A DNA stretch of 63,841 nucleotides, filler included, from Octopus bimaculoides (taxonomy: Eukaryota): NCBI RefSeq assembly GCF_001194135.2. It is 5 parts of 4 records of this genome, joined end to end, with 100 filler letters (N's around TTAATTAATTAA, not from the genome) between each part and the next. Parts side by side here need not be neighbours in the genome. Positions count along the whole stretch, not along the records: positions 9,263 to 40,086 come from NC_068984.1; 4 more parts are not named here. The stretch is one strand, 5' to 3'. Each line of letters opens with the position of its first letter. Position 1 is the first letter of the stretch. This document shows, in pieces, positions 9,263 through 36,551 of this stretch. A model generated the notes under the pieces. The model was not told the origin of the DNA. It worked only from the letters and a program-made list of their open reading frames with translations, and did no database searches. A program made the translations under genes and the position numbers.

Positions 9263-9435
9263 ACAGATGCTGGTGTGTTTACGTCCCCGTCACTTAGCGG
9301 TTCGGCAAATGAGACCGATAGAATAAGTACAAGGCTTACAAAGAATAAGTCCTGGGGTCGATTTGCTTGACCAAAGGCGGTGCTCCAGCATGGCCGCAGT
9401 CAAATGACTGAAACAAGTAAAAGAATAAAGAATAA
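9263..9435 (+). mobile_element. 3' half of the abundant SINE (GGTTCGGCAAA..GAGACCGATAGAATAAGTAC..CAGCATGGCCGCAGTC..GAAACAAGTAAAAGA)
   Basis: Near-identical to 48417-48590 and 55613-55770. Confidence 0.8.
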
Positions 9436-9449
9436 AAAGAACATGTTTT

Positions 9450-9782
9450 ATCTTTTACTTGTGTCGGTTATTAGACAGCGGCCATGCTCGGGCACCGCCA
9501 TGAAGAATTTTTAGTCGATGATATCGCACCCTCCCATCCAATACTTAATTTTATTACACCTGGTACTTATTCTATCGGTCTAGTTTCAGCCGAACTGCTA
9601 AGTTGCGGAGACGTGAAACACCAACACCGGTTGTCAAGCAACGTTTTCTTCTACTAAATCCACTCACAAGGCATTGATCGGCCCGAGGCTATAGAAGAGG
9701 ACATGGTGCCACGCAATGGGACTGAACTCAGAACCATGTGGTTGGGTGGCAAGCTTCTTACTACACTGCTATGCCTGCGCCT
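9450..9782 (-). mobile_element. Near full-length SINE of the same family, tail-to-tail with the copy at 9263-9435
   Basis: Reverse complement of both the head (GGCGCAGGCATAGCAGTGTAGTAAGAAGCTTG..) and the tail segments. Confidence 0.75.
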
Positions 9783-11704
9783 ACATTAATGTTTGTATTT
9801 ATTTCAAGTCATAATCCTTTTTACTATAGGCACAAAACCTGAAATTTTGAGAGGAGGAGCAAGTTGCATACATCGATCCTAGTACTCAACAGCTACTTAG
9901 TCCATCGTCCCTGAAAGGATGAAAGGCAAAGTCGACCTCAACGGAGTTTGTATTCAAGATATAAAGAGCCAAGCGTAAAGAGAGAAATGGCGCTTAGCAT
10001 TTTCACATTAGATTGAAAAACTACCCAATACATTTAGCACAGTATATGTCATGTTTATTAAAGTTTTACTCAAGAAGAGGAGTGACAACGTCTTTACTTG
10101 TAAAAGTATAATACATACACACATGCATACATATATAAATACATACATACATATATATGCATATATATATATGTATATATATGTATGTATGTATGCTTAT
10201 ATATGTATGTATGTATGTACGTATACTTGGGTTTTCTGTATGCGTGCACGCGCATGTGTGTGTGTATGTGCATTCATGTGTGTGATTTTGGGAAGACAAC
10301 CTCCTTTGGATCTATTTCCAGTGAAGCCTTATTTAGATCATTGAGAATGAACAGAGTAATCAAGATGGCAAAGAATATAACCCTATATAAAGATCTTTTG
10401 CTATAGTAAAATTGAAAATGAGAATGATAGGCTCAGACAGAATGCCCCTTGGTATTCGTTCCGACTCACTACGCTCTCAATTCAAATCCCGCCGGTATTA
10501 ATTTTGCTGTTCATCCTTTGGGAGACGATAAAAATCAAAAAAATCAAAATGTGCTAATCCAAGATGGCAGATTGATAAAACTGTAAAAATGTCGGATCGT
10601 CTGCCTTTGCGGTAGTTGTTCTGAATTCGAATCCCGGTATGTACTTTGGTTGCGGATTTAATCTTTTTTTTTTATTTTAAGTTTATTTAAATGTTATCAT
10701 TATTACTCTGTGAGCAGGCAGAATCGTTAGCACGCCTGACTAAATTCGGCTGAGGCCCCTTTTGCTCTTTATCCTTTCAACCCGTAAAATAAGTACCAAT
10801 GAAATACTGGAATCGATAAATTCCAGGCATTAGCATTATGAGTATAGTAGAAATAATTAATCAATAAATTGTGTATGATCCTTTATTTGATACAGTCTAT
10901 TATATTCTATATAATCTGTATACTACATTTAACCCTTGAATGTGATTAGCAGAGTCCACTTCGAGGCAAACATTCTAGTCAGTTCTCTTGTTTGAGGACA
11001 CCTTCTTCCCTCCCACCTCAATACCATTCTGTTAAGAGTTATGAGCTGTAATTTCTCTCCCGATTAAAGGAGTAAGATAAAACTGAAATATGACAACTAT
11101 AAAGCGGAGAATTCATTAAACCCGGATAAGGAATTTTTCCAGTAAGATGCATAGTACATAAAGTGTTTTTCTTTGGAAGAAACCTTCGCTACTGACGTCC
11201 AAGGAATAGAGAAATCGTAAGAGAAACAATATTCGCTATAGAACAAAATATGCACCATAATCACATCATCGACACTTAGACGTTACTATCTCGAGTCATA
11301 GGATCGGTTACGCGATTTCCATGGCTTATAAATGATCGAAATCATAACATCCCTCCTGATAGGACGCCCGTCTATCGCAGGGTTATTCACTGCTGAGTAG
11401 ACTGTTGCAAGGGAAAATGAAGTGTTTTGCTCAAGAGTACAACGCATTGCCCTGTCTGAGAATGGCAAACACGACATTGCAATCGTAAGTACATCATCCT
11501 AACCACTAGGCCACGCACCTTCAACATGGAATAAAAATAAGCATTCTAAATAATCTAGATGGATGCACTCTTAGACTATATCGTGTGCTTGACATGAGTT
11601 TACAATTCGAAATTATATTATCAATATTCCAACATTCTGTTAGATCTTAGATTTTGCTATTATGTAAGGATTAGAAATATTCAAGCATTGTGTGTGTGTG
11701 TGTG

Positions 11705-11761
<57 letters not shown>

Positions 11762-13339
11762 TGCATATTTATTCCTAATGCATTCCGGGAGATACAAACG
11801 TAACTATGCTAGTCGCTATTGCGTATAACACAGGAGAACATCTCCCTTTTACAATGACTGTATTTTTAACACACTCCGCTCATTGGTGCAAAGGATTTTG
11901 GGACACCTGTGTTTAAACATGCTGTGTCTCGCCAACCAAAATTACCCAGACCTTTGAACCTAAACAAGCCACTGGCTTTGTTGATAATTCTAGCAGACTG
12001 TTTGCTGCTCAGTACCGATGTATACTAAAATATCTGTATATTTTGACTAGGTATACCGAGAATATTTTTTATGTAGATAAAATAATTTCGAGTTATTTGG
12101 CGTACTGACGAAATGAAGATTAAAAAAAATATCAGGTAACAAGGGAAAAAGTGCAAAAAAGTGTCAATCACTTGATTGAAGAAGATACAACTTGCGGTAT
12201 AAGTTAAGTTATGCTATTAACAATGTATGCAAATGTGCATGTTGTGTGTGTGTGTGTGAGTAGGTGTTGGCGAAATGGCGAAAAATGGTGAAACTTCGAT
12301 GTTCATCACTCCTGGATGGGATTAGAGGTGAATTATCTTCCCAGTTCTTAACACTCGCTGCTTTGAGAGAATATTCTCCACCTAGCGGCAAATACGCAAT
12401 TCGTATACATGAAGTATATGCAGTTGATAATGGTTAGCGGTGCTTCTATATATATCTATATCTATATATATATATATATATATATATANNNNNNNNNNNN
12501 NNNNNNNNNNNNNNNNNNNNNNNNNNNNNNNNNNNNNNNNNNNNNNNNNNNNNNNNNNNNNNNNNNNNNNNNNNNNNNNNNNNNNNNNNNNNNNNNNNNN
12601 NNNNNNNNNNNNNNNNNNNNNNNNNNNNNNNNNNNNNNNNNNNNNNNNNNNNNNNNNNNNNNNNNNNNNNNNNNNNNNNNNNNNNNNNNNNNNNNNNNNN
12701 NNNNNNNNNNNNNNNNNNNNNNNNNNNNNNNNNNNNNNNNNNNNNNNNNNNNNNNNNNNNNNNNNNNNNNNNNNNNNNNNNNNNNNNNNNNNNNNNNNNN
12801 NNNNNNNNNNNNNNNNNNNNNNNNNNNNNNNNNNNNNNNNNNNNNNNNNNNNNNNNNNNNNNNNNNNNNNNNNNNNNNNNNNNNNNNNNNNNNNNNNNNN
12901 NNNNNAAAGAGAGGAAAATAGTGAACGCAGGGAAAAACATTTTTTTGAAAAGAGAAAAGATAGAAGAAAGAGAGAAAAAACGTTCTCTCGTTTAAACGTC
13001 CGTGTAGGAAAAGAAAGATGGACAATGGTCACGTGTGAGCAATGAAAGAGAGAGAAACAGAAGAGGGAGAGAGAGAGAGAGAAACAGATAGAAAACGGTG
13101 AAGTTTTTCTCAGCGTTCACTATTTTCCTCTCGTTCTGGTCTAAAAGTAAAATTTTCTTGTTCTGTACTTTATCAGATGTAATAAGTTGTCCTGTACTTT
13201 TCCAGCTTTATAATCTTAAGAATATTATTTCTCTTGCTCACATTCTTCCATATAATAAAACTATTGATAATAGTGTTTTAAAATGAGTGCAAATATACAA
13301 AGGGCAAATGGGTTAAAATCATATAAACAAATTATTTTT

Positions 13340-15190
13340 GGAAAAAAAATTAAACGTTGATAAATATTTATGTCTATAAAGAATTATGACATCCGAAATC
13401 TTATTAAGTAATTTTTTTTATCAGTGCAGAGTATATTGATTGATTCTCTCGTGCATAATTTACAATTCATGTATGTGTATTGTACGGTGAGGTTTCCGTT
13501 ATAATAGCCCAATACAGACTGAAGTCTTTATTACGCTTTTTTAATTTAGTAATGTGGGTTGAGTTCTTTGTTTCTTGATTAGTAAATGAATTTGCGTGCT
13601 CCCTATATCTAGTTTTAAAACCAGTCGTACTTCCTATGTATATCTTCTTTGATTCATTGAGTGTTGTAATATCAACTTTAGGCACGACATTTCTCCACAA
13701 ACAGAATCCATTCAAGGGACATAAAAGCCGGTTACGGCAATTACATGTTTTATTTTCGTACTTCGTCTTTATATTTTTGACGTCTGTATTCTTCTTATTA
13801 TTATTCATATTGAGGCCAGTTATATGGACATCTCTATCGATACCATTATTCCTAAGTTTTAATCTATCATTAGCCACAATTATAGATCCTAGATTCGATA
13901 TTGTTGAGTAAGATAATTTAAGACAGGATCTATTAAAAATGGGACGATATTTATGGCCTAATGGGAAATTCCTGTCAATAATCCTAAAAAATAATTTAGA
14001 GAGATTACTGATTTGAATGGAAGGGAGAGGAGGTAAACCAGATAATTTCCTGTTTCCTCGCCGAATTGTTCCTAATCGGCCCAATATAATAATCATTATA
14101 GTTAAATGAATTATAGTGTCTTCTATTATAGTGTGGACCTGATGCTCGTGAGGGTCATTCACGGAAGGAGTATCGATGTTTAATTTCGCAAGATTTGGAA
14201 AACGTTTACCTAATTTATTTTTAAATATTGTATTCTTAACATGATATATCTTCCTATCAAATCTGCTGTTTTTCAGTGCTGTATTATAAAAAGGTACAAA
14301 GTTATAAAAAATCTTTTCATTTGCAGATAAGTTTGAGATTCTTATCGACACCCCTTTGACCACCCCTTTAATAACACTTTGAGGATGATTTGACAAGGCG
14401 TGGATATAATTAATGGTTTTATTAGGCTTATGGTAAGGATGAAATAAGCCATTTTCTAAATTTAATGTGACGTTTAAAAAAATTAACACTTTTAATGATA
14501 TTTTCGAATAGAATATCTAAGTTATATATCTTTAAAAAATTTAATCAGTCTTTTCCTTATTCTATCACTGGATTGTAAAGAGGAGCCAGAAATAGCGAAT
14601 AACGCGTCATCTCTGTAGAAACCGCCTCTGATATTTGGGAGTTCCTCCTTAATTTTCGAAAGCAAGAATAGATCAACAGTATCAGTGACTTGGGTGGAGT
14701 CCGAGGATCCCACTGTAACAACAAAGTTGTCTTGAATGTCACATCGGGTCCCGGTCCTATTTCTTAAAAGTTTTATTGTTTTCCTTCGGTAAAAATAATA
14801 TCTTTCTCTAAGGTGTAATATCAGTAAGGGTCTCAGCAAAAGCATTTGCTTTACCAAAATAAGATTTCCTTTTATTGTTCAGTGAGCAAACCATGTTATG
14901 GAATCTCCCGGGGATTTACAGAGTGGTAGCTCTACATTTCTTTTAACGCAAGGGATGATTCTATCAATAATAGACTTACTAACTCTGTCCAAGTCTGATT
15001 TAGTTGGGCAGATTAGCCTAACAGCGGGTTTGCTCTCAAACTTTGCCTTGTAATCCTTAAAAGTAACATGTGGTACTTTAGGGGTATAAGGTTCCGTCCT
15101 ATCTAATAATTTTAGCTCCTTAATTAAGTCGAAGTGTTTCGTGTTAATTTCGTTCAATTTGTTATTGGTTACTATTTTGTATTTAGAGTC
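13340..15190 (-). mobile_element. Degenerate Penelope-like retroelement (RT + GIY-YIG endonuclease)
   Basis: RT pieces: PHVTFKDYKAKFESKPAVRLICPTKSDL; VTVGSSDSTQVTDTVDLFLL..GGFYRDDAL; GLFHPYHKPN..YIHALSNHP. Endonuclease: CNCRNRLLCPLNGFC..NVV..KIYIGST..FKTRYREH..F, followed by C-terminal CKLCTRE..LNK. Split by stops and frameshifts. Confidence 0.9.
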
Positions 15191-16189
15191 TTTTTTTTGT
15201 ATACATATATATTTATATATATACATCTATGTATATATGTATATATATNNNNNNNNNNNNNNNNNNNNNNNNNNNNNNNNNNNNNNNNNNNNNNNNNNNN
15301 NNNNNNNNNNNNNNNNNNNNNNNNNNNNNNNNNNNNNNNNNNNNNNNNNNNNNNNNNNNNNNNNNNNNNNNNNNNNNNNNNNNNNNNNNNNNNNNNNNNN
15401 NNNNNNNNNNNNNNNNNNNNNNNNNNNNNNNNNNNNNNNNNNNNNNNNNNNNNNNNNNNNNNNNNNNNNNNNNNNNNNNNNNNNNNNNNNNNNNNNNNNN
15501 NNNNNNNNNNNNNNNNNNNNNNNNNNNNNNNNNNNNNNNNNNNNNNNNNNATATTCCTGTGACAAGCTTACGAAAGTTTCTATAATAGGCACATAGGCTG
15601 AAATTTAGGGGTTGAGGACTACTCGATTACATCGAACCCAGTGCGTGACTGGTACTTATTTCATCGAATCTGAAAGGAGGAAAGGCAAAGTCGATCTCGG
15701 CGGAATTTGAACTCAAAATGCCTCTAAGAATTTCACTCGGTGCCTGAATAATGATGATGGTGGTAATAACAACAACAACAACAACAACAACAATACAAAT
15801 AATAATAGTGGCTGATGGTATGTACATCTCTGATCACGAGCAGAAATAGTGGAGGAGCATCATAGCCATGTGTTGAGAGGAATTCTTTGGGCTTTGGATA
15901 ATTCACCTTTGGAAACGTGGGTGTTTCGTTCAACATCCTCAAGCAACCCTTATTCAGGGACCTTTTGAGCGGGATGGGCTATTCGACCTGGCGAAAGTTC
16001 TAACTGGGCCCCACCTGCGAGGTCATGCGTTGTTTATCTTGATATGAGATGACCATGTCACGCACATATAGTTGTGATGCTTGTGCCTGGTATACCCTTA
16101 TCAGACGGGTAGTCATGATGGGTTCGTATTTTGGGCTTCGTATATTTTACCCCAATGTAACTTCGATGGCATGCACTGCTCTCTCACTC

Positions 16190-16239: not shown

Positions 16240-16535
16240 CGTTCTACTAAAGGCACAAGGCCTGAAATTTTGGGTGAGTAGCAAGTCGATTATATCGACT
16301 CAAGTGCTCAACTGGTACTTATTTTATCGATCCTGAAGGGATGAAAGACAAAAATATAGTTTCAAATTTTGATATAAGGCCAAGAAGTTCGATGGAGAAG
16401 GTAAGTCGACTACATCGACTCCGAAGGATAAAAGGCGAAGTCAACCTCGACGGAACTTGAAGTCAAATCATAAGGACGGACGAAATGATGCAAAGCATTT
16501 TTCCCGGCGTGCTCATGATTCCGCCAGCCCGATAT
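16235..16535 (+). mobile_element. Abundant ~300-bp interspersed repeat (CACAAGGCC..AAGTCGATTACATCGAC..GGTACTTATTTTATCGA..GGATGAAAGGCAAAGTCGACCTCGGCGGAATTTGAACTC), often next to (AAT)n
   Basis: Related copies at ~2250-2410, 9820-9960, 15580-15720, 19950-20150 and 26020-26130. Class (SINE or other) not resolved. Confidence 0.7.
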
Positions 16536-16819: not shown

Positions 16820-18865
16820 TGTGTGTGTGTATGCGTGTGTGTGTATGTGTGACTTGCTCTGTAGCAGAGAACTGTGTCTCCTGGTATTATATTTCATGTC
16901 CCCTATTTCTCCCTCAAACTATTCTAACTTGCTGGATATAGAAATAACAATCTGTTATATAATACTTTGTGATTCATGGAAATATTTATCTTCTGATGAT
17001 AAAATACAAGGTTTTCTAGGAGAAATTTATAGACGTAGTGGTTGTTTTCTTCTCCTTTCAAAAATGCTTGAGGCACGTAGATAAGATTCAGATTCGAGAA
17101 CAAATCGTTGAAAATCTCCAATATCAATCGATACACATTAAGCAAAAAAAAAGTGAACCAACTCTCAATGACAAATCTATCCCAAAACGACACCACTTAT
17201 ACTACTCGTACATTCTGAAATATACAGCACAAATTACTACATATTCTTTGAATAGGGTCTATCGATGTAATATATTAAATTTTTGCATGTGGTTTGTTAC
17301 TTGGATGACTTCAGCAAACGTTTTGTTCCATCTAACAGGTAGGGATATAGCCTACGATTTCTAGGAAAAATGCTGTTTATGTTGCCTTGAAGGGCTTTAA
17401 ACTAATTTATATGTGAGTTCCGCTCACTATGGGATATCTTTTATATTTATTTGTGAATCTTAGCTGCTCTGCTAAAGGAGATTCGTTTCCATGCAATAAC
17501 ATGTTATCTTGATGCAACTAATCCGTTCCAAAATTATACCAAGGGAAGATATATTAAACTCAACATCGACCTTAAAGAAACATTTGTCAATTTTAAAGTA
17601 TTGTCGCTGAGCTATTGGAAAAATGTTCAGACATGTTTCAGTGTTATTATGTTCTCTTCAACGAAGCATAGACTACATCGTATATGCAAAAGTAGTAACG
17701 AAAACATCACTAAGTACATGTACAACACTAGACAGTGATTGATGCAGTAAAGTAGAACCGTTTATAGAGTAATAACTGGGAGACATCATCAATGTGGTAA
17801 ACGATAGTTATGTTAGTGTTAACATATCTAATGTAAGGAACATTAAAAGAAAACTATAAAAAAATATGCAGCGAAGAAATAAAATACAATATTAGGCAAT
17901 GACTTATATCATTATTTTTCTTCGGTAAGTACGGGAGACAACTCCAGGAATTTGCTAGTGACGTCGTCAGTGAAGTACAGACTTCAATAGTCTTGCCGAA
18001 ATAGCGATAAGAGAATTGCGAAGTAAAAGTAGAGTGTTGTGTGTTAAAATCAAACCAGATAAATGGAAAGAAAAGCCTATTTCATAAGTGTAAACTCGGT
18101 TACAGAAATAAACGAATAATAATTGTGATAGACGAATTCAACTTGTTTATTTAAGAAAATCGCTGATGACACGATGAGGGCAGCCAATTGGTTTTTCTCT
18201 GTTTAATCACAAAAACAATGAACTGAATTTAGTGCGATTACTGAAATGGTGACTAGTACTGTTTTAAGAAGGCGAAATGAATAGCCTACAGCAGATTATA
18301 TTATTAATAAACTACAAGCAATCTTATTACGAATTCCTGTCCGTTTTTAAACGAGAAAGGTGAAAGTTTTACTTGAGAATTACGCTTAGTCATTTCAATC
18401 TATTTTAAACTGATTTCTTTCGTGTTTTGGCAAATCTTATTTCTGTTGTGTCTGTCCATTAACTAAAGTCGTTCGGCAAACGTCGACCATTTTCCTTGTT
18501 GATAACTGAAGACTGAGAAAGCTATTATTTCTAGTATATTGTTTTACATTAGAGAAGTATGAAATAGTAAATAGAACTGTGTTAATTTCTATCCTTTTCT
18601 TTTTTCGTTTCAAGAATAATAGTGTTACAGAATATTTTATAATCTTATTTTCTGATTTAATTTTAGGAAATTACGTTTCTCTTGCCTGAAAGAATTATTG
18701 TCTTGAAACATTAGGCAAAACTACCATTTGAGGGAAGACAATTTAACTGTAATAATGTGTAGTTGTTTACTATTTAAGATGTTTCTAATCCTTCCAGATG
18801 CATACATCCAAATATATATGCACGTTCATGTATACATCATACTTGCGTATATACACATGCATATG

Positions 18866-19006: not shown

Positions 19007-21399
19007 CTCTGTGAATGGAGTATCCGAACTACAAATTTACCCTTATTCCAAGCCATTATTAGAGTAAGAAACCATTTACGAAACTCTAGCAAGGAAAATG
19101 CTAATTATAAAACAACAAAAATATGTGACGCAACATGCACAAACAAAAATTCAATAAATAAAAGAAAACAACAACCATATACAAACGTACATACATACAT
19201 ACATACATACATTTATACGTGCATCCATTCTTACATACATGCACACTCATGCATAATTTTATATACACATACCCTGGGTTTGCCAAGAAAAGCAAAGCAA
19301 ACTGACCCATATCCTTCAAATCCAGTCGATTGTACAGTGAAAATTTGCACAATCACATTTATCTTGCACAATCACATACATCTTGTAAAAACAATCACAG
19401 GCATACTCATGAACACTTATTGCATGAGCGCCATTACATCCTCATATACCTCTACGTATAAGCACACTTTAGCTCACATTCACAAATATCCTGGAATTGT
19501 CTTGACACGAACGAAGAAGCTGACTTGAATCTGCTATAGAGAACTTACATTAATGTCAAAGATAAACATACAGACGGCTTTGAATATGTCAGCTTTGTTA
19601 GTATAAGATTTTATCCACCTCTGACGAATATTTTCACTACAGATTAGTGTTTGTGAAACGTCTAGTGAAGTAACTTACATTTAGATGAAAGAAAAGAACG
19701 TTTGTTGTTGCTACTGCTCTCTCAAACCTGTCTGTAAAATTTATTCTGCATACGGATACACAACGAAATTGAAATAATCAGGGTGTAGTAATAGAGCTAG
19801 AACAATACCAATGGGTGGATTGCATCATATTAAAAAATAAAGCATGAACAAAAGCATAAAAGTCATATTAAGGTTTAACACTTCACACATGAGACAATAT
19901 GTAGGTATAGTAAATAATTTACAAAAAAAGGCAAGAAAAGTATTAATTTATTAGTTTCAAATTTTGGCTCAAGGCCATCAATTTCGGGAGAGGAGTAAGT
20001 CGATTACATTGACCTCAGTACTTCAGTGGTACTTATTTTATCGATGCCGAAAGGGTGAAATACTGCCTCGGAAGTATTTGAACTCAGAACTTAAAGACGG
20101 ACGAAATGCCGCTTAGCGTCTTTCCTGGTGTACTAACGAGTCTGGTAGCTCGATGTTTTACAAATATTATTAATTTATTAACACATTTAAGTTGGCGAGC
20201 ACCACTTGATTACTGATGTCGATAAAATCGACTTAGCCCTTTCCCTGGAATTACTGGCTTTGTGCCAAAATCCGAGACCAATTTATTAACATTTTTGCAC
20301 AACATATATTCCAGAGCTAAACAGTAGAATGCTTTTGTTGATAGAACTTCTCGATCGGGATTGATCGTAGATTAAGCAATAACAATGCTGTGATTTTCCT
20401 GCATCACCAAGTCCCACGGAAGCCAACCAGTGATGGTCTTCGTCAGCCACGAGTAAACAGCCATCATTACACACACACACATACACACACACATACATAT
20501 ATACATATATATANNNNNNNNNNNNNNNNNNNNNNNNNNNNNNNNNNNNNNNNNNNNNNNNNNNNNNNNNNNNNNNNNNNNNNNNNNNNNNNNNNNNNNN
20601 NNNNNNNNNNNNNNNNNNNNNNNNNNNNNNNNNNNNNNNNNNNNNNNNNNNNNNNNNNNNNNNNNNNNNNNNNNNNNNNNNNNNNNNNNNNNNNNNNNNN
20701 NNNNNNNNNNNNNNNNNNNNNNNNNNNNNNNNNNNNNNNNNNNNNNNNNNNNNNNNNNNNNNNNNNNNNNNNNNNNNNNNNNNNNNNNNNNNNNNNNNNN
20801 NNNNNNNNNNNNNNNNNNNNNNNNNNNNNNNTATATATATATATATATATATGTTAAAAGCTGACATGCATTTGCTTTCCTAGGAGCCGTGGGAAGGTCT
20901 ACTATTCTTGGCCTCTCATATGTAACATTGATAATTGAAAATCTGCAGATACATTAGGTCATTTACTATTCAAAAACGAATTGTCATAGAATTGTTTTTT
21001 AAAGCCACCAGGTGAAAACAGTAAACACGTTTCTGTCATATTAGACGTTTTCAGCAAGGCATATTCTAATCAGTTGGTAACACTAAGAGTAGAGATAGAT
21101 GTTGGCAAATGTAAACTAAATGATTATAAATATTCTTTTTATTGAGTTTGATTGTCTTAGGAGTGAATGTGCATTCTGTAACCTTTTTACAGAGTCAATC
21201 AATTACATTAAGTGTTGACACTTGATTTTAATACATTGTTATTGTAGTTACTTGTTGATGTTTATCCCCCGTGTCAAACCTGATCCTGAAAAAACATGAC
21301 TAAAAGAGTTCCGGCCATAACCATCCAGTCTTTTTAGGCACAATGTCAACAAAACTACACTACTCAATGTGTTAGTGAAAACGTTAGGCTGTGATTTTT

Positions 21400-21660: not shown

Positions 21661-23083
21661 GGCAATGTTATTTTAGCAGAACAGTAATATTTATTATAAA
21701 ACATTCGTGAATTTATTGTCAGCAATACTCTTTAGAACGATCTGTTCAGATGTTGAACTTTCATATATTTAATCCTTTAGTTTCCTGAACTTTTCAGCTT
21801 CAATATAGGTAATACATCATTGCACAAACTTTAAATCCATACTTTCTGTACAATGACCAGTACAGATTACAATAATGTTTACAAGCATTTTTAGCTTGAA
21901 TTTCGAAACAACTAATTTGTGTCATATTTTCAGTTTTCCACATATCTTTTTAAACAATGTATTGAGTGCTTAATCGTAAGTAGCAACGAGAAAACACATA
22001 GTTGCTTCATTATATCTCCACCTATGTGAATGTAAAATACTCTCGTGCTATTGTATTTTTAAAAAATATTTTTCCAAATAGCCATGGAGTGACATATCAG
22101 AAACAAAAATTAGTGGATTTAATCGGTAACGATATTAAGTCGTATGCTCAGTGTTATTATGTAAAAGAGCAACAAATACTATATATTGATGTAGAAAGAC
22201 CTCATTATTTGCAAAAGAAAAATCTGATACCTTTATTAATGACTACTAATATCTTAGTTCTTATTATATCACAATCTCCAGATCTTCTGACTAAACACAC
22301 ACGCACACACACGCGCACACACACGCACACACGCAAACACACGCACACACACACATACACACGCACACACTCCCACACACTCCCACACAAACACACGCAC
22401 TTACACACACAGACACATACATACACAGAAACACACATACACGCACTTACACACACAAGCTCACACACAGACACACACACACATACACACAGAGGCACTT
22501 ACACACACAAACACACACACACATACACAGACACACACATATGTATATATTTATGTCTCGATTGATCGTAATAAATATTATATTTTATCACAGTTGTTCA
22601 TCATTNNNNNNNNNNNNNNNNNNNNNNNNNNNNNNNNNNNNNNNNNNNNNNNNNNNNNNNNNNNNNNNNNNNNNNNNNNNNNNNNNNNNNNNNNNNNNNN
22701 NNNNNNNNNNNNNNNNNNNNNNNNNNNNNNNNNNNNNNNNNNNNNNNNNNNNNNNNNNNNNNNNNNNNNNNNNNNNNNNNNNNNNNNNNNNNNNNNNNNN
22801 NNNNNNNNNNNNNNNNNNNNNNNNNNNNNNNNNNNNNNNNNNNNNNNNNNNNNNNNNNNNNNNNNNNNNNNNNNNNNNNNNNNNNNNNNNNNNNNNNNNN
22901 NNNNNNNNNNNNNNNNNNNNNNNNNNNNNNNNNNNNNNNNNNNNNNNNNNNNNNNNNNNNNNNNNNNNNNNNNNNNNNNNNNNNNNNNNNNNNNNNNNNN
23001 NNNNNNNNNNNNNNNNNNNNNNNNNNNNNNNNNNNNNNNNNNNNNNNNNNNNNNNNNNNNNNNNNNNNNNNNNNNNNNNNNNN

Positions 23084-24798: not shown

Positions 24799-27720
24799 TT
24801 AGCTAGCTAGCTAGCTATATATAATGTACCAAACGCACATATATTAGAATTGTGTTGATTTAAAAGAAATATTGTGCAAGAAACCCCACAAAAGTAAAAT
24901 GAGACAAAAGCAGAACATTATTAGTGAAACAAGAATATATATTTTGTAATGCTGACAACTTTACAAGCGACGATAATGAAAGAAATCTTCTCGCAAAGGC
25001 ATGTCAAATATTTAGAAAGAGATAAAGGGAGACACACACAGTCGCACACCCATACACGTGTGTGTGTCTGTCGGTGGGGGTGGGGGGTTCATGAAAAGAA
25101 AAGAGCCGGATGGTTTGTGGCAAGCTCTGCTGAGAGTGAAGTGTATGCGATATAGATAATTCATTGGACAATTGAGAGCCTGGCAGATCTCCAGTTCCGA
25201 ACTATCATTTTATTTTCTTGTATTCATGGTTTTGTCATCCCTAATTATCTTTCTTGATTTTTTTTCCTCCTTACACTTCAAGAAGTTTAATGATCGAATT
25301 TATTCATCACAAGATGGCGCTTCAGGCGATTGAGCTGAATAGGCAATGTGAGTGATTATGTATCAGTCCTCTTTGGAATAGTTATGCTGAATATAGCTAA
25401 TTATGTTCTATATATTACAACAGAGGAAACAGAAGCTTTTGAGGAATTCATTTCATTGTTGATTTCCTGCTTTCACCCAGGTACAATATTTAATTCTAAG
25501 CTACGGAGGAATTGTGTTTTTGAAGATATATTTGTTCATATATATTTTTTGCAATTGGCTAGGCTTTCTTCAACGAGTAGTAATGACATACGGCCTTTCA
25601 TATGAGAGAAACATATAGTTTACTCGCTACTTGATTATTGGCAGTGTTTAGGCATATTTTTGCACGGAAACGCGAAAGAGAATAGATATAAATATACAAA
25701 ACTGAAAATTTTTAGGTGGGGTGTTGATGGTGGGAGATTGTCATAATAGGGTTTTCATCACAGAAATGAAGAACTGCTACGGCATCGGCTTGTATTTTTA
25801 GCCCTGTATTTTTAGTTCTTATAAAGTCACTGGAAAAATTTAAGTTACTAAAATACCCATGTTGCATATAACTAGGGATGGAGTGAGTTAAGCCCCTTTA
25901 AATGAAAGAAAGAAAGAGTGAGAGTGAGTGGGAGAATGAAAGTGAGTCTGGAAAAGAGCGTTGATGAATTGTGATGGTTTCTACAGTTTATAGATAATTT
26001 CTAATTTAGGCATAAGGCCACAGAAATATAGATAGATATTTAATGGTATTTATATTTATCGACCCCAAAGGGACGAAAGGCAAAGATGACTTCAGTGGGA
26101 TTTGAACTCTGAACATAAAGAGACGGAACATATTTTTTCTGAGTCCTTCGAACGATCATTTCGATGAAATGTAGAAAAGAATTAAGATACGACAATTATG
26201 TTTTCTAAACGTTGGAAGAAGAAATAAGACAGAACTATTCTGCATTGAACGTGAAACATACTTCAGTAACCAGTTGAATGGATTTTTTTACGTCACATAT
26301 TTCGTTGGCAGTAAGAGCTTTGGAATGACAGAATTGACATGTCTCTACTTTTTGAGTTCAAACACCACCGAAGTCGTACTGAAACCGATCTAATTGACTA
26401 TATCCCTACCTCACAAAAAAATCTGTAGCCGCGTCTCACAGTTAGAAATTAATATTTTGTTGCTGCCCTTAATGTTTAGACTTCGGTCAGCACATATTGA
26501 GCGGATCAATGATTAAAAAATTTATTTTATTCGTGACCATCTCTTCTTGTTTGTGCATTAGAGACAGCTATGTCCAATCTATCCTTTGTTTAAGGTGGTA
26601 GAATGTAATCAGTGGAAATTTAGTTGCTATTTATGACAGATCGAGCGAATATGCAAAGTTCTATCGTTGACTCATCTATATTTTATTGGAAGTGAGGGCG
26701 GTATAATAGCAGAATCAGCAGAGCGGCGAAGAAAATGTGTGTGGTACTTCAATACACCCTGCCAGGATCGTCTTCACTTTCACCTTTCTGGGATAAATAA
26801 AAATGAAGTATCTATCAATATAAATCGAACAAATTTCTATCTTTCAGCCTAATTTCAAACTCAATATTTCATTGCCACCTATTGATTAAATATGTAAAGG
26901 AGAAATTATAACCTTTCTCGATTCCAAACACCTTCCATTTGCTTGCGAGCTTGATTATTTTGGTAAATTCTGCACTGATTATACCGGGCCACGTGTATGA
27001 CGTTATATTTTCCCTTCATACTGTTTTGCTAACCATTATGAATGTTTATTATAGTACAAAATATGGGCCTTGTGCTCTCTCAATATATTTCGAGTTCTTT
27101 GTTTTTGGTACACTTTCCGGTGTAATTTTGAGAAAAACTGTTTCCAAGTTTTTGATTCATATTTAAAATAAATTTCATATTACTAAACAAACTTATTCAG
27201 CACGCCTGAATAGGTTCATGTTTTAATTTAATTTTCGCCTTTTGAAGGACTACTTACTTTTATTCAAAATTATATTTTCCTAGATTTTAACATTGTAAAT
27301 GTAGATGGTTGCCATTTTCTATCTAAAGGAATAAAAACAGGAATATTATGTTTCCGACAATTTTGAGCCGTCTATTTGTTTTCGCTTCTGTATAAAGAGG
27401 GTGGAGTTGGGGATGACTGACTCTATAGTGGCCGAACTCGCTTTTCTTCGATATAGGCTCAGTTATATAATATTTGTGTTTGTTTTTTGAAGAGCTTGGT
27501 TGCATTTAGCTATTATTATCTCATATTATTTGCTTATTTTCAGTGTGGGAAGGTGTTTTCTATTATTCTTTTCTGATTGCTTTAGTAGTAGTAATTTCTG
27601 CTATGTTTAAAACTGTTTCTGTTAGATTACCATTTGTGATTCCTATGTTTATTCTGTTGCGCTGTGTGTTATTCTGTTTGCTGGTAAGTTAGGGGAGAAA
27701 GAGCAAGTTATAAAAATGCA

Positions 27721-27786: not shown

Positions 27787-28005
27787 CAAATGATTGTTTG
27801 CGTGACCATTTTTGTTTTTGGTCTTTCGTAGTTTTCCATCTACATATCTTTGTTTTCGATTTCTCGTGAGAAATTCTTAGTTTATGTGCAAGATGTCCTT
27901 TATTCTGCTTTCAATGTGCAGTTAGGGCTCACAGATTTTGTGTATTGCTAAGTCTGTTGTAATATACAAACGTATATTTGGTTGTGCATCATTAGTTGTT
28001 TTATT

Positions 28006-28405
28006 ATAAATAGAAATAATACATTTCTAAATCTCTCAGAGAGATTTATGCCGTAGTGATACGATAAAGTAGTTGTATGCTGTCAACTTAATGTGACAGT
28101 CTCATGAAGGGAATAATACTGCTGCTATTTAGCCCTAGGAAGCTGCACCGCTTCTTGTCGGCCTTGACACATTTCCTGTGTCCTTATGTTTACAAGGGGG
28201 AGACAAGCACCTCCACCCAGCTAAGCCTGCAGTACGACTTCGGTGGTGTTTAGCTGGGTGGAGGTGCTTATCCCCCCTTGTAAACATAAGGACACAAGAA
28301 ATGCGTCAAGGCCGACAGGAAGCGGTGCAGCTTCCTAGGGCTAAATAGCAGTAGTATTATTCCCTTCATGGGACTGTCACATTAAGTTGACAGCATACAA
28401 CTACT
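28006..28405 (-). mobile_element. Palindrome-plus-tail insertion (family B, long copy)
   Basis: ~157-bp inverted arms (28068-~28224 and ~28250-28405). 62-nt tail 28006-28067 containing the hairpin TAAATCTCTC-A-GAGAGATTTA. Perfect 14-bp TSD TTAGTTGTTTTATT at 27992-28005 and 28406-28419. Confidence 0.85.
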
Positions 28406-29216
28406 TTAGTTGTTTTATTGTATTTTCAGAATGTATGTATTGCTATGTTCTTTACTTCCTACGATTTTTAAAAGTATTCCACCATGTACTTTTATAATTT
28501 TTTAAAAATGTAGTACCTCTTCGCACATTTCTTTGGATACAGGAGTTTTCTTCCATCTTTTTCTTCTTTTCTATCGTTTTTTTTTTCTTTAAAATTTACT
28601 TGAAATCATTAACATGTAAAAAATAATGAGTGTTGACGACTACAATGACGAAGAGAACATGAATATGGTAATGAACACGCCGATTATTCTGCCGATGAAG
28701 GTGGTGATCACGTGGTGCAACTAGTGCTACTGGTACTACTGCTGCTGATGACGAAGAGATTACGATGATGAGGAGGAGGGCAAATCGTTATAATGGTGGC
28801 GACGAAGAGGAAAATGAAAACGATATTTTTCTGTTTAAATATTGAATTATTCCATTTTTTGTCTAGTTACTTATTGATTCATTTGTTTATTTATTAATAT
28901 TTTAATATATAATTTAATAAATAACAACATTGGCAAATCGAACGACAGTTCTCAAAAGAAAACATAAATAATGCATAATCGTATGTGCATACCCACGCAT
29001 ATATTTCAAAATACACACACATACAGTTTTGTGAAAATATAGGTATGTAGATGTACCTTTCGCCCACTTGCTACATACATACATACATACATACATACAT
29101 ACATGCATGCATGCATACATACATACATATATTACATACATACATACATACATACATACACACACACACGCACACATATATATAGAAAGATAGATGGATA
29201 GATAGATAGAGATATA

Positions 29217-30010: not shown

Positions 30011-30508
30011 TTCAACTACAACTTATGCGATCAAACACCCTTGACTGTATACCAATGCATTATGTTGTTCCTGAAAAAAGGAGATATACATACATACATA
30101 CATACATGCATATATATATATATATATATANNNNNNNNNNNNNNNNNNNNNNNNNNNNNNNNNNNNNNNNNNNNNNNNNNNNNNNNNNNNNNNNNNNNNN
30201 NNNNNNNNNNNNNNNNNNNNNNNNNNNNNNNNNNNNNNNNNNNNNNNNNNNNNNNNNNNNNNNNNNNNNNNNNNNNNNNNNNNNNNNNNNNNNNNNNNNN
30301 NNNNNNNNNNNNNNNNNNNNNNNNNNNNNNNNNNNNNNNNNNNNNNNNNNNNNNNNNNNNNNNNNNNNNNNNNNNNNNNNNNNNNNNNNNNNNNNNNNNN
30401 NNNNNNNNNNNNNNNNNNNNNNNNNNNNNNNNNNNNNNNNNNNNNNNNNNNNNNNNNNNNNNNNNNNNNNNNNNNNNNNNNNNNNNNNNNNNNNNNNNNN
30501 NNNNNNNN

Positions 30509-30585: not shown

Positions 30586-31473
30586 TTGGGTCATCCCATA
30601 AATAATATGGTTTTTTCAACTGCATGAACTAAAAGTCGGAGGGTACAGGATAAACTACCAGCGTCAACTTGCTATAAAAGCAGGTAGCAATTTTACCTTG
30701 TCCTTATTCTTAGTGCAAGTTTTGAAGAGTGCTGTTCGATTTTAAGTTATTTTTTCAAACCTATAATGCAAGTGACCAAAAAGCATATTAGGCATATGTT
30801 GCTTTATGACTTCAATAAAGGCAACAACGTAACGGGAAGTGCGAGATATATCAATGCAGTATATGGGTATCGGACAATAAGCGTAAGCCAGTGTCAATGA
30901 TAGTTCCAGAGATTTGGAGCTGGAAACTACAGAGCTCGTCGAGGACGTCCTGTAAACACTGGTGGAACAAAATCCTATCGTAACTGTTGGAGAACTAGCA
31001 GAGAAGCTTGGATTTGGTCATTCAGCCAGTCATTCAAGTCAGCGTTAGAAGAAAAATGACTAACTTTGGTTTCAAGACGAAAGATGTTCTTCCATCAGGA
31101 TAATGCTCAGCCACACACGGTGGGGATACAATTCCAAAAGCTGGAGCAGTTTGAATGGGCAACAATTCTCCACCCACCATATTCGCTGGACATTGCCCCA
31201 TCTGATTATCATTTATTCTGCAGTCTTCAAAATCATTTGGACGGAAAATATATGAATGCTGTAGACATGGTCAGAACAGTACTGGAGGAATATTTTTCGT
31301 CATAGACAAGTGAACTTTGGAAAGGGGGACCTTGCAAGTCTACCAGATAGGTGGAAGAGCATTGTAGAAAATGAAAGAGAGTATATTTTAGATTAAAAAA
31401 GAACTTTGTTCATCTTAATTTCTGAAAAGTAAAAGAAGTATAAAAAAACCGCATTATTTATGGGATGACCCTG
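30586..31473 (+). mobile_element. Internally deleted mariner (DD34D) element
   Basis: TIRs TTGGGTCATCCCATAAATAAT / ATTATTTATGGGATGACCC. Retains FHQDNAQPH..HPPYSLDIAPSDYHLF. Lacks the WVPHEL and first catalytic D region present in the copy at 43601. Confidence 0.9.
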
Positions 31474-32879
31474 CTTATCAACCACATGGTTCTGGGTTCA
31501 GTCCCAATTCGTTGAACCTTGGGTAAGTGTCATCTACTATAGCATTAAATAAACAACGGTAGCTAAAAAACGTAGACGTAGGAAGACACAGAAGGCCTTC
31601 ATCATTTATCAACCGAATGGTAATACTTAGTTTCATGCTTTTAATGATAATACTGACAAATTTGCATATCGGTGACCATGTTGAGAAGTAGAAGTGTGAT
31701 CCACAGAGGACCAGCTTCATTTTGATGTATGATACATGTTCCTGTGTTGGTAATTATATCTGTCCTAAAAAAAACAGCATTCCCTTTTGGCTCACCCTCG
31801 TGTGTATATATATNNNNNNNNNNNNNNNNNNNNNNNNNNNNNNNNNNNNNNNNNNNNNNNNNNNNNNNNNNNNNNNNNNNNNNNNNNNNNNNNNNNNNNN
31901 NNNNNNNNNNNNNNNNNNNNNNNNNNNNNNNNNNNNNNNNNNNNNNNNNNNNNNNNNNNNNNNNNNNNNNNNNNNNNNNNNNNNNNNNNNNNNNNNNNNN
32001 NNNNNNNNNNNNNNNNNNNNNNNNNNNNNNNNNNNTATATATATATATATATATTGATATATGTATACATACATATGTATATACATACATACGTAAGTAC
32101 GTGTATGTGTGTGTATGTGCGTGCATGTAAGTTAGGGCAATTTATCATGTTAATGGCTGCGAATGAGACATTTATTAAACTTTCAATTATTTAGGAACAT
32201 TAAAATAGGAATTTAATACTTATTGCCAGAACTTTAGCCAACTATAAGTTGTAATATTCTTGTCATTGCGAGACACAAAGTTATAAAAAAGATAATCTGA
32301 ACAGCTCGGACTAATGCATCAATACTTGTTTGAAAGTAAATTTGAGCTTCTGCATATATAATAGACTACGTGTTTATGTTTCACTATATGTATACAGAAA
32401 TTATAAAATATGTATATAAAAATCATGTCCACACATGAATAGTGTAGGTAATAACATTTGTATACATGTGGTCGATGTTCATCTATGCATACTTCTCTAT
32501 ATGTATATACGAATGCATGTATATATATATATAATAAAGTTGATAAAAGAAAATGGAGAAGACAAAATATAATAGATACTTGGTTCATTTTATTTGTATC
32601 ACAATGGAAAAGTAATGCAAAGTGAAAGAGATATATCTATATGAAAAATTATAAAAGGAACCGGATCAACAAAACAACCAAAAAATATTGAGCAACTTTC
32701 TTTCAATATATTTTGAAAATTGAATCACCCCAGAGGTCATTCACTAAAAGAATTAAGGGGATGACTGATCTCGCTTATTGGGACCGCTTTAAGGCATTGA
32801 AACTCTATATATTTGATCAAGCTAGTTGGCATCTGGATTGTTATTAACAATCCCTTACGAGGAAATTGCATCATCAAAT

Positions 32880-34212
32880 TGTAGCCATGTCTAACTTAAT
32901 AGCACCATGTGATAGGATTAGCTAAATCCTTTTTTAAAGTCAAGTTTGGTGGTATCATGGTCCATTCGAGTAGGGAGTTCTTGTTGAGTGAGTTGTGTCC
33001 AGGTATAGGTGGTTTATCCGGTATTCCTTGAAGAAATTTGTCGAGATTCCGTTTAAAGGTGATAGGATCCTTTTCCATTTTGATCTGTTTCGGGACAATG
33101 TTAAAAAGGGTAGGGCCTGTTGAGGAAAAGAAATTGTATTGCAGTGTATTTATGTGTTGTGAACCTGAATTGGGTAGTGGACATATGACTCGAGATCCTA
33201 GCCTTGAATGAATTTTGAAGCCAATGTTGAGGTTGTTTGGGTAATGCTGGTGGTAACTTGAAAATGATGTATCGCTCATGGCGGCGCTGGAGAGAATAGA
33301 GTTTCAATGCTTTAAGGCGGTCCCAATAAGTGAGATCAGTCATGCCCCTAATTCTTTTAGTGAATGACCTTTGGGGTGACTCAATTTTCAAAAAGCTTTG
33401 TGTTGTATGGGGAGAATTCATGGTGCAGCAGTACTCGAGGTGTCGCTGTACAAAGGAGGAGAAAGGTTCAAAGGATCCAGGCGCTCATCCTACGAGCTAC
33501 ATTGACCTTATTGTTGATTTGGGCACTCCAGCTGAGATTGTTATCAACAATTACTCCTAGGTCTCTGATATTATTAGATGCTGTGAGTAGTTCCTCTGAA
33601 GGAAGAGAGTACGGCTGTTTTAGCATAGTCTTTCTTCCAAAATGCATCAGCTCAAATTTTCCCTCGTTTAGTTGCATTCTATTTTTGTCTACCCATTGAC
33701 TCACAGCATGTAGATCAAACTGGAGTTCAGTTCCGTCTTCTTCTTCATTGATAATTTTCTGGAGTTTAGTATCAACAGCGAATATTTTCACTTTGCTGTG
33801 TTTTATGACGTTGGACAGGTCGTTCATATAGGCTGTAAAGAGGAGTGGGCCCAAAACAGTACTCTGAGGGACACCACTTGTGACTTTTGCTGGGCTCGAG
33901 TAGATTCCACCGATCACAACACGCTGTGTTCTGAAGTAGTTGTATGCTGTCAACTTAATGTGACAGTGCCCTGAAGGGAATAATACTACTGTTGGTTAGA
34001 CCTAGGAAGCTGCACCGCTTCCTAGGTCTAACCAACAGTAGTATTATTCCCTTCAGGGGACTGTCACATTAAGTTGACGGCATACAACTACTTCATCGTA
34101 TCACTGCTGCATAAATCTCTCTGAGAGATTTAGAAATGTATTATTTCTAAATGTTGTGTTCTGTTTTCTAGGAAATACCCAATCCAGTGCAGTAGCTTTT
34201 CACGGACATACA
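32880..34212 (-). mobile_element. CR1/L2-clade LINE 3' fragment (RT C-terminus), interrupted by family B palindrome at 33934-34152
   Basis: KLLHWIGYFLENRTQ | RVVIGG..SGVPQSTVLGPLLFTAYMNDL..KIFAVDTKL (YADD-like motif mutated)..LYSLQRRHERY..DKFLQGIPDKP. Frameshifted. Confidence 0.9.
33934..34152 (+). mobile_element. Palindrome-plus-tail insertion (family B, short copy)
   Basis: 77-bp arms 33934-34010 and 34017-34093 with loop TGCACC. 59-nt tail carrying the same mini-hairpin as the long copy. TSD G(C/T)TGTGTTCTG at 33923-33933 and 34153-34163, duplicating LINE codons R-T-Q. Confidence 0.85.
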
Positions 34213-35778: not shown

Positions 35779-36551
35779 CATGTGTGTGCGAGCAGGCATG
35801 CGTATGTATGTATGTATGTATGTATGTATGTATGTATGTATGTATGTATGTATATATANNNNNNNNNNNNNNNNNNNNNNNNNNNNNNNNNNNNNNNNNN
35901 NNNNNNNNNNNNNNNNNNNNNNNNNNNNNNNNNNNNNNNNNNNNNNNNNNNNNNNNNNNNNNNNNNNNNNNNNNNNNNNNNNNNATATATATATATATAT
36001 ATATACTTTCACACTCACAGGTACACACTCTAATACATACATACATACATATTTGTAGATGCATGGATATATATAAATCTCTGTGTGTGCGTAGGGTGTG
36101 TCTATGTGAGTGTGTATGTGTGTGCACGTGTCCGAGTTTGTGGTGTAAATATGCATTTATAACTTCTCTCATAATTGTTCATCTGAAATGTAAATACCAC
36201 AGAAGCTTATAGCAAATAATTTGTCATGGAAGTCACTAAATGCAAGAGACAATTGTTTTCCATTTCTAGTGTGTGGTGCCTTTGCACGATGTTCAAGTCC
36301 CACATTGGTATACTATCAAATCTTTAAACGTAGGTCGTTTCTAAAACGATGCCAGTAAGATAACATAGTCGTTTAGAGCCGTTTCATGACCGGTTAGAAA
36401 TAAAACGGATTTGTTGAATAAGAAGAGTAAACGATAATGTTTGGGGCAAAATAAAATGGAAGGTAAAGCGAAGACTGAGAAAAAGAGAAAGAAAATGTTT
36501 AACAAAAGGAACAATTATAAAGTATACAAGAAAGAAAACTGTAAAGACAGA

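What the first reader, a model, noticed from the sequence alone, without database searches (positions are those of the whole stretch)
27992..28419. Giant fold-back palindrome with a one-sided tail and a perfect 14-bp TSD: a retroposon disguised as a MITE
Seen: ~157-bp inverted arms (six transition mismatches and one small indel) around a ~25-nt loop. A 62-nt tail lies on one side only; it contains a 21-nt mini-hairpin and ends in a TATT-like simple run. The whole unit is bracketed by TTAGTTGTTTTATT on both sides. Established: long variable TSDs indicate target-primed reverse transcription, and Penelope-like elements are known to form inverted terminal repeats in which one copy has a short extra tail. 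Inference: this is a non-autonomous PLE 3'-end insertion whose second arm was copied from the first during integration, not a DNA-transposon MITE. Any transcript through it would form ~150 bp of dsRNA.
Basis: partly seen in the sequence, partly recalled or inferred. Interest (0 to 1): 0.72.

Follow-up and report, generated by a model that had tools for sequence, protein, structure and literature searches.

The report
Hairpin-shaped retroposon with one-sided tail
This is a real insertion of a short non-coding mobile element, a near-perfect 157-base hairpin with a 61-base tail on one side; a second copy 5.5 kb away shows the hairpin is rebuilt at each insertion, as Penelope-like retroelements do, so it is a tidy but fairly ordinary transposon case.

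Summary
Copy 1 has 158/157-nt inverted arms (six transitions, one 1-nt indel), a 25-nt loop, a 61-nt one-sided tail and a 13-14-bp target-site duplication (TSD).

A second copy of the same family lies at 33934-34154 in the opposite orientation. It has the same outer termini and the same 61-nt tail. Its arms are only 77 nt, turning at a small internal palindrome, and its TSD is 9 bp. It interrupts a LINE reverse-transcriptase frame that becomes continuous once the insert and one TSD copy are removed.

All five differences between the two copies' sources appear in both arms of each copy, and three are double transversions. So both arms are made from one template at each transposition. Variable TSD length, no terminal inverted repeats at the true ends, and 2-nt microhomology at the tail-less junction argue against a cut-and-paste MITE.

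The layout matches published Penelope-like element (PLE) insertions, and a PLE GIY-YIG ORF remnant lies 13 kb away. No sequence link to any PLE was found, there is no hammerhead ribozyme, and the host genome could not be searched.

Verdict: a retroposon whose second arm is copied is likely. PLE mobilisation is plausible but unproven.

The parts
27992..28005 (.). Copy 1, target-site duplication, left copy (TTAGTTGTTTTATT)
   Evidence: exact 14-nt direct repeat, only two occurrences in the window.
28006..28066 (-). Copy 1, 61-nt one-sided tail. Read on the minus strand it follows the arm: TATCGTATCAC...TTTCTATTTAT.
   Evidence: 55/61 identical to the tail of copy 2, including a 41-nt identical core; two small hairpins.
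28067..28224 (-). Copy 1, tail-bearing arm (158 nt)
28225..28249 (.). Copy 1, 25-nt centre (loop). Positions 28230-28251 are a 22-nt exact match to 26360-26381.
   Evidence: blastn, E = 6e-6; coordinates.
28250..28406 (+). Copy 1, tail-less arm (157 nt)
   Evidence: six transitions and one 1-nt indel against the other arm.
28406..28419 (.). Copy 1, target-site duplication, right copy
33925..33933 (.). Copy 2, 9-bp target-site duplication, left copy (TGTGTTCTG)
33934..34010 (-). Copy 2, tail-less arm (77 nt)
   Evidence: (D18/D19).
34011..34016 (.). Copy 2, 6-nt loop TGCACC. It is the centre of the palindrome GGAAGC-TGCACC-GCTTCC, which also sits inside each arm of copy 1.
34017..34093 (+). Copy 2, tail-bearing arm (77 nt)
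   Evidence: (97% complementary).
34094..34154 (+). Copy 2, 61-nt tail (CATCGTATCAC...TTTCTAAATGT)
34155..34163 (.). Copy 2, 9-bp target-site duplication, right copy
33468..34190 (-). LINE-type reverse-transcriptase reading frame interrupted by copy 2. It serves as an internal 'empty site'.
   Evidence: deleting 33934-34163 gives the continuous frame ..LHWIGYFLENRTQRVVIGGIYSSPAKVTSGVPQ.., and Pfam RVT_1 spans the junction (residues 9-141, profile positions 104-204).
26360..26381 (+). 22-nt stretch inside a diverged SINE-like copy, identical to the centre of copy 1

Best explanation
The finding is one of two insertions in this window of a family of short, non-coding retroposons. The mobile unit is a single-stranded template whose 3' part reads ...CTGTCACATTAAGTTGACAGCATACAACTACTT, optionally followed by a 61-nt extension.

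At each insertion the unit is copied twice in opposite orientation, with the 5' ends meeting in the middle and the 3' ends pointing outwards. The most likely route is this: the first cDNA strand, made by target-primed reverse transcription, folds back on a short self-complementary stretch near its 3' end and copies itself. That stretch is 6 bp (GGAAGC/GCTTCC) in copy 2 and 2-3 nt in copy 1. The far end then joins the other side of the staggered target break at 2-nt microhomology.

This gives a hairpin whose arm length depends on where reverse transcription stopped, a tail at one outer end only, and a target-site duplication of variable length.

This layout is the published hallmark of Penelope-like elements (PLEs), so a PLE RT/GIY-YIG enzyme supplied in trans is the most likely mobiliser.

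Shown: mobility, boundaries, variable TSD, variable arm length, and arms made from one template. Inferred: the RNA intermediate, the snap-back step, and PLE as the enzyme source.

My estimates: about 0.7 that it is a retroposon whose second arm is made at insertion, and about 0.45 that PLE machinery does it.
For: 1. A second copy has the same outer termini and tail but different arms, loop and TSD: 77 against 157 nt, 6 against 25 nt, 9 against 13-14 bp.
2. Copy 2 is a clean insertion. Removing the insert plus one TSD copy restores a continuous RT frame, and RVT_1 spans the junction.
3. In the four-arm alignment of 75 shared columns, 66 are invariant and 5 differences are copy-specific and present in both arms. 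Three of those five are double transversions with no wobble intermediate. Four are singletons. None is arm-specific and shared between copies. So the arms are re-synchronised at each transposition. They are not homogenised afterwards, since the arms have since diverged 3.8% and 2.5%.
4. The true ends carry no terminal inverted repeat.
5. In both copies the inverted repeat runs 2 nt into the target at the tail-less end, TA in copy 1 and TG in copy 2, matching the first tail bases TA and CA. This points to a junction made by a polymerase or by microhomology joining.
6. The turn in copy 2 sits exactly on a small palindrome native to the arm sequence.
7. The PLE literature describes an inverted 5'-truncated copy next to the element, a 30-40-bp tail at one end only, TSDs of 8, 9 and 10 bp, and palindromes at the inverted junction read as self-priming. 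It also describes trans-mobilisation of foreign sequence and non-autonomous derivatives (PMC8557442; PMC3846280).
8. A PLE ORF remnant with a GIY-YIG domain lies in the same window, and PLEs are abundant in octopus genomes (PMC13282606).
Against: - Only two copies could be examined.
- The element shares no sequence with the one PLE remnant in the window. The autonomous partner is unknown.
- No hammerhead ribozyme turned up, even at E <= 10. Canonical C-terminal-EN PLEs usually carry one in the pLTR, although Naiad and Chlamys PLEs do not.
- The tail is 61 nt, about twice the described 30-40 nt. Its two hairpins close to a precise 3' end also look like the 3' recognition module of a stringent LINE/SINE pair.
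- In both copies the two arms are almost equal in length. Snap-back explains this, but so would a palindromic master element.
- The short arms of copy 2 could also come from a central deletion between the direct repeats GCTTC(C) of a copy-1-like palindrome.
- The fixed outer end of the tail-less arm is not explained by simple snap-back.
Confidence: 0.5

Rival explanations
1. A hairpin-bodied SINE-like retroposon mobilised by a LINE. The master transcript already contains both arms plus a LINE-derived 3' tail with its two hairpins. It is copied end to end by LINE target-primed reverse transcription. Copy 2 belongs to a subfamily with a central deletion.
For: - Both outer ends are constant in the two copies, as expected for full-length copies.
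- The tail has a precise 61-nt length and two conserved hairpins next to the 3' end, like the recognition modules of stringent LINE/SINE pairs (that comparison is from my own knowledge).
- The TSDs vary in length.
- The centre of copy 1 carries a 22-nt match to the B-box region of a SINE-like repeat, in the orientation expected for head-body-tail.
- Copy 2's shorter form could come from deletion between GCTTC(C) direct repeats.
- LINEs are abundant in the window.
Against: - All five source-level differences are present in both arms, three of them as double transversions, and none is arm-specific. A palindromic master copied as a whole would not stay symmetric unless some step homogenised it.
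- No LINE 3' end in the window resembles the tail.
- LINE-mediated insertions are not known to produce equal-armed inverted duplications. Twin priming inverts a different, upstream segment (own knowledge).
Confidence: 0.27
2. A foldback or MITE-type non-autonomous DNA transposon moved by a DDE transposase, with long inverted repeats kept alike by gene conversion. The tail would be an asymmetric subterminal segment.
For: - Long, near-perfect inverted repeats and flanking direct repeats.
- Two copies within 6 kb of each other.
- Arm homogenisation is known for some transposons with long inverted repeats (own knowledge).
Against: - The true ends are not inverted repeats of each other, because the 61-nt tail lies between one arm and the TSD in both copies.
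- The TSDs are 13-14 bp and 9 bp, and no consistent choice of boundaries makes them equal.
- The arms have drifted 2.5-3.8% since insertion, so no homogenisation is still acting.
- No related transposase is nearby. The mariner-like ORF at 31066-31305 is unrelated, and mariner makes TA duplications.
Confidence: 0.06
3. Not a mobile element: a local palindromic duplication or an assembly artefact.
For: The assembly is gap-rich, with seven N-runs in 31 kb, and palindromes can arise as sequencing chimeras.
Against: - Two copies sit at unrelated sites, each with its own flanking duplication.
- One of them interrupts an ORF cleanly.
- The arms have diverged by point substitutions.
Confidence: 0.02

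Closest known systems
Penelope-like element insertions with an inverted pLTR and a 'tail' (for example Pen2a_Av of Adineta vaga, Penelope of Drosophila virilis, Naiad)
   Same: Head-to-head inverted 5'-truncated copies with the 3' ends outward. An extension at only one outer end. TSDs of variable length (8-10 bp reported; 9 and 13-14 bp here). A palindrome or overlap at the inverted junction. Possible mobilisation of non-coding or foreign sequence in trans.
   Different: There is no RT/GIY-YIG ORF or direct pLTR between the arms, so the whole insertion is only the inverted pair. The tail is 61 nt rather than 30-40 nt. No hammerhead ribozyme is present. No sequence similarity to a PLE has been shown.
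Non-autonomous PLE derivatives: Chlamys MRC1 in Chlamydomonas, animal non-LTR retrozymes
   Same: Short, non-coding, and presumed to borrow PLE enzymes. They resemble their partner only at the 3' end or pLTR.
   Different: Those form head-to-tail tandems or pLTRs, and retrozymes carry hammerhead ribozymes and circularise. This element is a single inverted pair with no ribozyme.
MITEs and foldback elements (DNA transposons)
   Same: Small size, long inverted repeats, a strong hairpin, and flanking direct repeats. Automated MITE finders would probably call the arms a MITE.
   Different: The termini are not inverted repeats once the tail is counted. TSD length is not fixed. The arms are re-copied from one template at each transposition.
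LINE 5' inversions by twin priming, and SINEs with LINE-derived 3' tails
   Same: Variable TSDs, microhomology at the last-joined junction, a 3' module with hairpins, and possibly a SINE-type head fragment at the centre of copy 1.
   Different: Twin priming inverts a different, upstream segment and does not duplicate the same segment in both orientations. No Pol III head is present in either copy apart from the 22-nt fragment. No LINE with this tail was found.

Membership tests
Penelope-like elements (as a non-autonomous derivative or trans-mobilised insertion) | Sequence continuity with, or 3'-end similarity to, an element encoding a PLE RT plus GIY-YIG endonuclease | tested here: not met
   The only PLE ORF remnant within reach (13467-15226, GIY-YIG E = 2.7e-4) shares no sequence with the element (blastn word 7). 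The host genome could not be searched, so this is a very weak negative. Across the genome it is effectively untested.
Penelope-like elements | Inverted 5'-truncated copy joined head-to-head, so the outer ends are constant and the inner ends vary | tested here: met
   The outer termini are identical in both copies. Arms are 158/157 nt and 77/77 nt. n = 2.
Penelope-like elements | [quoted passage not shown] | tested here: met
   A 61-nt tail on one side only in both copies, 55/61 identical. It is longer than the described range.
Penelope-like elements | Target-site duplication of variable length | tested here: met
   13-14 bp and 9 bp. n = 2.
Penelope-like elements | Palindrome or overlap at the inverted junction (a sign of self-priming) | tested here: met
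   Copy 2 turns at GGAAGC-TGCACC-GCTTCC, which is native to the arm sequence. Copy 1 has only 2-3 nt of overlap and a 25-nt loop.
Penelope-like elements (canonical Penelope/Poseidon/Neptune) | Hammerhead ribozyme motif in the pLTR | tested here: not met
   No hammerhead hit at E <= 10 in either copy. Naiad and Chlamys PLEs also lack it, so this does not exclude PLEs as a whole.
MITE / foldback DNA transposon | Terminal inverted repeats at the extreme ends, next to the TSD | tested here: not met
   One end is AAGTAGTTG... and the other is ...ATTATTTCTAWWTRT. The 61-nt tail separates one arm from its TSD in both copies.
MITE / foldback DNA transposon | TSD of fixed, superfamily-specific length | tested here: not met
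   9 bp against 13-14 bp. No consistent placement of the boundaries makes them equal. n = 2.
SINE (Pol III head plus LINE-derived tail) | tRNA-, 5S- or 7SL-derived head with internal promoter boxes | tested here: inconclusive
   There are no tRNA or Rfam hits. The sub-threshold SRP hits fall on both strands and are hairpin artefacts. Only a 22-nt match to the B-box region of a SINE-like repeat sits at the centre of copy 1.
SINE (Pol III head plus LINE-derived tail) | 3' tail shared with a partner LINE | not testable with these tools
   No LINE 3' end in the window matches, and the host genome is not available.
LINE twin-priming inversion | The inverted 5' segment comes from a different, upstream part of the template than the direct 3' segment | tested here: not met
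   The two arms are copies of the same segment at 96-97% identity.

The most novel reading that the evidence does not exclude
The parent is a SINE-type transcript, with a tRNA-like head whose B-box fragment survives at the centre of copy 1, followed by a body and a 61-nt tail. Penelope-like enzymes mobilise it, and it is converted into a MITE-like perfect hairpin at every insertion. On this reading a retroelement pathway would seed the host genome, probably a cephalopod, with long dsRNA-forming hairpins. Those would be ready substrates for ADAR editing or small-RNA pathways, and they would be systematically mis-annotated as DNA-transposon MITEs.
Probability: 0.15. Interest if true: 0.6.

Novelty: new member of a known kind. 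Interest (0 to 1): 0.4.

Why it matters
Three reasons, if the reading holds.

1. It is a clear small example of a retrotransposition pathway producing something that looks like a MITE. Repeat annotators that classify by inverted repeats plus TSD would file it, and perhaps many like it, under DNA transposons.

2. The pair of copies gives unusually direct evidence that the two arms are synthesised from one template at insertion. This bears on the still unresolved PLE integration mechanism: self-priming, and the origin of the tail.

3. Each copy can form 77-157 bp of near-perfect dsRNA when transcribed. That is relevant to RNA editing and small-RNA biology if the family is abundant.

None of this is surprising in kind. 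PLE inverted structures, tails and non-autonomous derivatives are all already described.

Tried and rejected
- Rfam at gathering thresholds over the whole piece gave no hit.
- Rfam at E <= 10 over both copies gave only sub-threshold SRP and miRNA matches, on both strands. These are artefacts of a long hairpin. There was no hammerhead.
- Rfam over the PLE remnant gave nothing. Over the SINE-like copy at 26250-26480 it gave nothing meaningful.
- ARAGORN found no tRNA-like gene.
- Sensitive blastn of both copies against the piece found no third copy and no solitary tail. The weak hit at 18506-18533 is AT-rich chance.
- The protein route to the host genome failed. The PLE ORF's best database relative is only 53% identical, on a 1.7-kb Logan contig that carries no trace of the element.
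- The window's own ORFs are not on record, so the host assembly is outside these collections.
- The octopus repeat-annotation paper holds no consensus library as text.
- I tested whether the arm mismatches are all G:U wobbles on one strand, which would be a sign of a selected or edited hairpin RNA. They split 3:3, so there is no strand signal (by hand).
- I checked whether the weak 22-nt flank similarity, 27932-27953 against 28427-28448 (D2), extends the TSD. It is out of register and was rejected.

Full report
**Observation**

- The arms 28067-28224 and 28250-28406 are 158 and 157 nt. They differ by six transitions and one 1-nt indel.
- The centre is 25 nt, 28225-28249.
- Between the left arm and the flanking repeat lies a 61-nt segment, 28006-28066, with no counterpart on the right.
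- TTAGTTGTTTTATT flanks the whole unit at 27992-28005 and 28406-28419. It occurs nowhere else in the window, where 0.10 hits at up to one mismatch are expected by chance.
- One T is shared between the arm end and the repeat, so the duplication is 13 or 14 bp.
- As RNA the unit folds at -309.7 kcal/mol, z = -34.

**A second copy**

A repeat search of the piece found a second member of the family 5.5 kb away in the opposite orientation, at 33934-34154 (families D18/D19).
- It has the same outer termini (AAGTAGTTGTATGC...).
- It has the same 61-nt tail, 55/61 identical with a 41-nt identical core. Here the tail is on the right.
- Its arms are only 77 nt and its loop is 6 nt.
- The turn lies on the palindrome GGAAGC-TGCACC-GCTTCC, which is also present inside each arm of copy 1.
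- It is flanked by a 9-bp duplication, TGTGTTCTG.
- It interrupts a minus-strand LINE-type reverse-transcriptase frame. Deleting 33934-34163 in a script restores ..LHWIGYFLENRTQRVVIGGIYSSPAKVTSGVPQ.., and Pfam RVT_1 then runs across the junction.

So the element is mobile. Its boundaries include the tail, and the duplication is made at insertion.

**What the two copies say about mechanism**

(a) TSD length differs, 13-14 bp against 9 bp. No consistent placement of the boundaries makes them equal.

(b) The true ends are not inverted repeats of each other, because the tail sits between one arm and its TSD in both copies.

(c) In the alignment of the four arms over 75 shared columns, 66 are invariant and 4 are singletons. 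Five differ between the copies and are identical in both arms of each copy. None is arm-specific and shared between copies. Three of the five are double transversions (A:U to C:G, U:A to G:C, C:G to A:U), which have no wobble intermediate. Independent compensatory change is therefore implausible. The arms have also drifted 3.8% and 2.5% since insertion, so nothing keeps them alike in place. It follows that both arms are made from one template at each round of transposition.

(d) In both copies the inverted repeat runs 2 nt into the target on the tail-less side, TA in copy 1 and TG in copy 2. The first tail base differs to match, T against C. This is a microhomology or templated junction of the kind polymerases leave. 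With n = 2 it is only suggestive.

(e) The minus-sense strand of each copy reads as a cDNA whose 3' end pairs with a complement a few bases upstream and is then extended along itself. The pairing is 6 bp in copy 2 and 2-3 nt in copy 1. This is an inference.

**Comparison with known systems**

PLE papers describe this layout: strong 5' truncation, an adjacent inverted 5'-truncated copy giving inverted repeats, and a 30-40-bp tail at only one end that is ascribed to endonuclease-mediated resolution (PMC8557442). They also describe TSDs of 8, 9 and 10 bp, a 31-bp tail at the 3' end of one inverted pLTR, palindromes at the inverted junction read as self-priming, and trans-mobilisation of foreign sequence by pLTRs alone (PMC3846280). 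Non-autonomous PLE derivatives are known too: Chlamys MRC1 and animal retrozymes.

PLEs are present in this genome. Three consecutive minus-strand ORFs at 13467-15226 encode a PLE-like RT C-terminus and a GIY-YIG domain, with homologues carrying PF26215. I judge the host to be a cephalopod, probably an octopus. That rests on my recollection of its abundant SINE and on the microsatellite-rich, 33% G+C sequence, and it was not verified. Octopus genomes are rich in PLEs (PMC13282606; PMC8967140).

**What is missing for PLE membership**

- The element shares no sequence with the PLE remnant in the window.
- Neither copy has a hammerhead ribozyme, even at E <= 10.
- The tail is twice the described length.
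- The host genome was out of reach of every collection, so neither a census of copies nor a search for the autonomous partner could be done.

**Main rival**

The main rival is a hairpin-bodied, SINE-like retroposon mobilised by a LINE.
- In favour: the precise 61-nt tail with two conserved hairpins, the constant outer ends, and the 22-nt exact match (E = 6e-6) between the centre of copy 1 (28230-28251) and the B-box region of a diverged SINE-like copy at 26360-26381. That match lies in the orientation expected for head-body-tail.
- The match could equally be a template-switch filler, or filler copied from DNA 1.7 kb away.
- Against: the symmetric arm differences, unless the 5' arm is regenerated by snap-back in each cycle. 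In that case the two models differ only in which reverse transcriptase is used.

A DDE-transposase MITE is disfavoured by points (a) to (d). An artefact is excluded by copy 2.

**Verdict**

'PLE' is the best-fitting known architecture but is not demonstrated.

I put about 0.7 on a retroposon whose inverted arm is made at insertion, about 0.45 on PLE machinery, about 0.27 on a LINE-mobilised hairpin retroposon, and under 0.1 on a DNA transposon.

In kind this is a new member of a known class. The interest is moderate: it is a clean illustration of retrotransposition that mimics a MITE, and a possible source of long dsRNA.

Noticed in passing
window 13467-15226 (minus strand): Three consecutive ORFs (340, 111 and 115 aa) form a decayed Penelope-like element. 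They cover the RT C-terminal part, a CX2C...C zinc-knuckle-like motif and a GIY-YIG domain (Pfam E = 2.7e-4, just under the cutoff). The best database relative is 53% identical, and others carry PF26215. The 5' part is lost in the N-run 15249-15550. No hammerhead was found at 12906-15250.
   Followed up: partly
window 32711-32808 and 33296-33393: A 98-nt inverted repeat, 93% complementary. A segment of the LINE ORF that hosts copy 2 is repeated in inverted orientation just beyond that LINE's 3' UTR. It is either a second, convergent LINE fragment or an inverted duplication at the LINE's 3' end.
   Followed up: no
window 26300-26440, with 26100-26165 on the minus strand: A diverged copy of the SINE-like family, and an inverted head fragment 150 nt upstream of it. 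The copy contains the 22-mer AAACACCACCGAAGTCGTACTG that is identical to the centre of foldback copy 1.
   Followed up: partly
window 9830-9927, 15589-15686, 16252-16533, 19966-20154: At least four copies of an abundant SINE-like repeat (families D16 and D20). From memory it resembles the major octopus SINE, which is the basis for guessing a cephalopod host. Not verified.
   Followed up: no
window 9263-9660: Two diverged copies of another SINE-like repeat lie tail-to-tail, with inverted arms at 9376-9429 and 9446-9499 (83% complementary, 16 nt apart) and A-rich 3' ends meeting at the centre. This is the opposite arrangement to the finding, and it looks like one copy inserted into the A-rich tail of the other.
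   Followed up: no
window 31066-31305 (+): A 79-aa ORF (..HQDNAQPHT..LHPPYSLDIAPSDYHLF..) looks by eye like the C-terminal part of a mariner-type transposase. Pfam gave no hit at E <= 0.01.
   Followed up: partly
window 12489-12905, 15249-15550, 20514-20831, 22606-23083, 30131-30508, 31814-32035, 35859-35984: Seven N-runs (assembly gaps) in 31 kb. Nearly all are bordered by (TA)n, (TATC)n, (ACAT)n or (AC)n microsatellites. The large 'repeats' that involve these spans are N against N, not sequence.
   Followed up: yes
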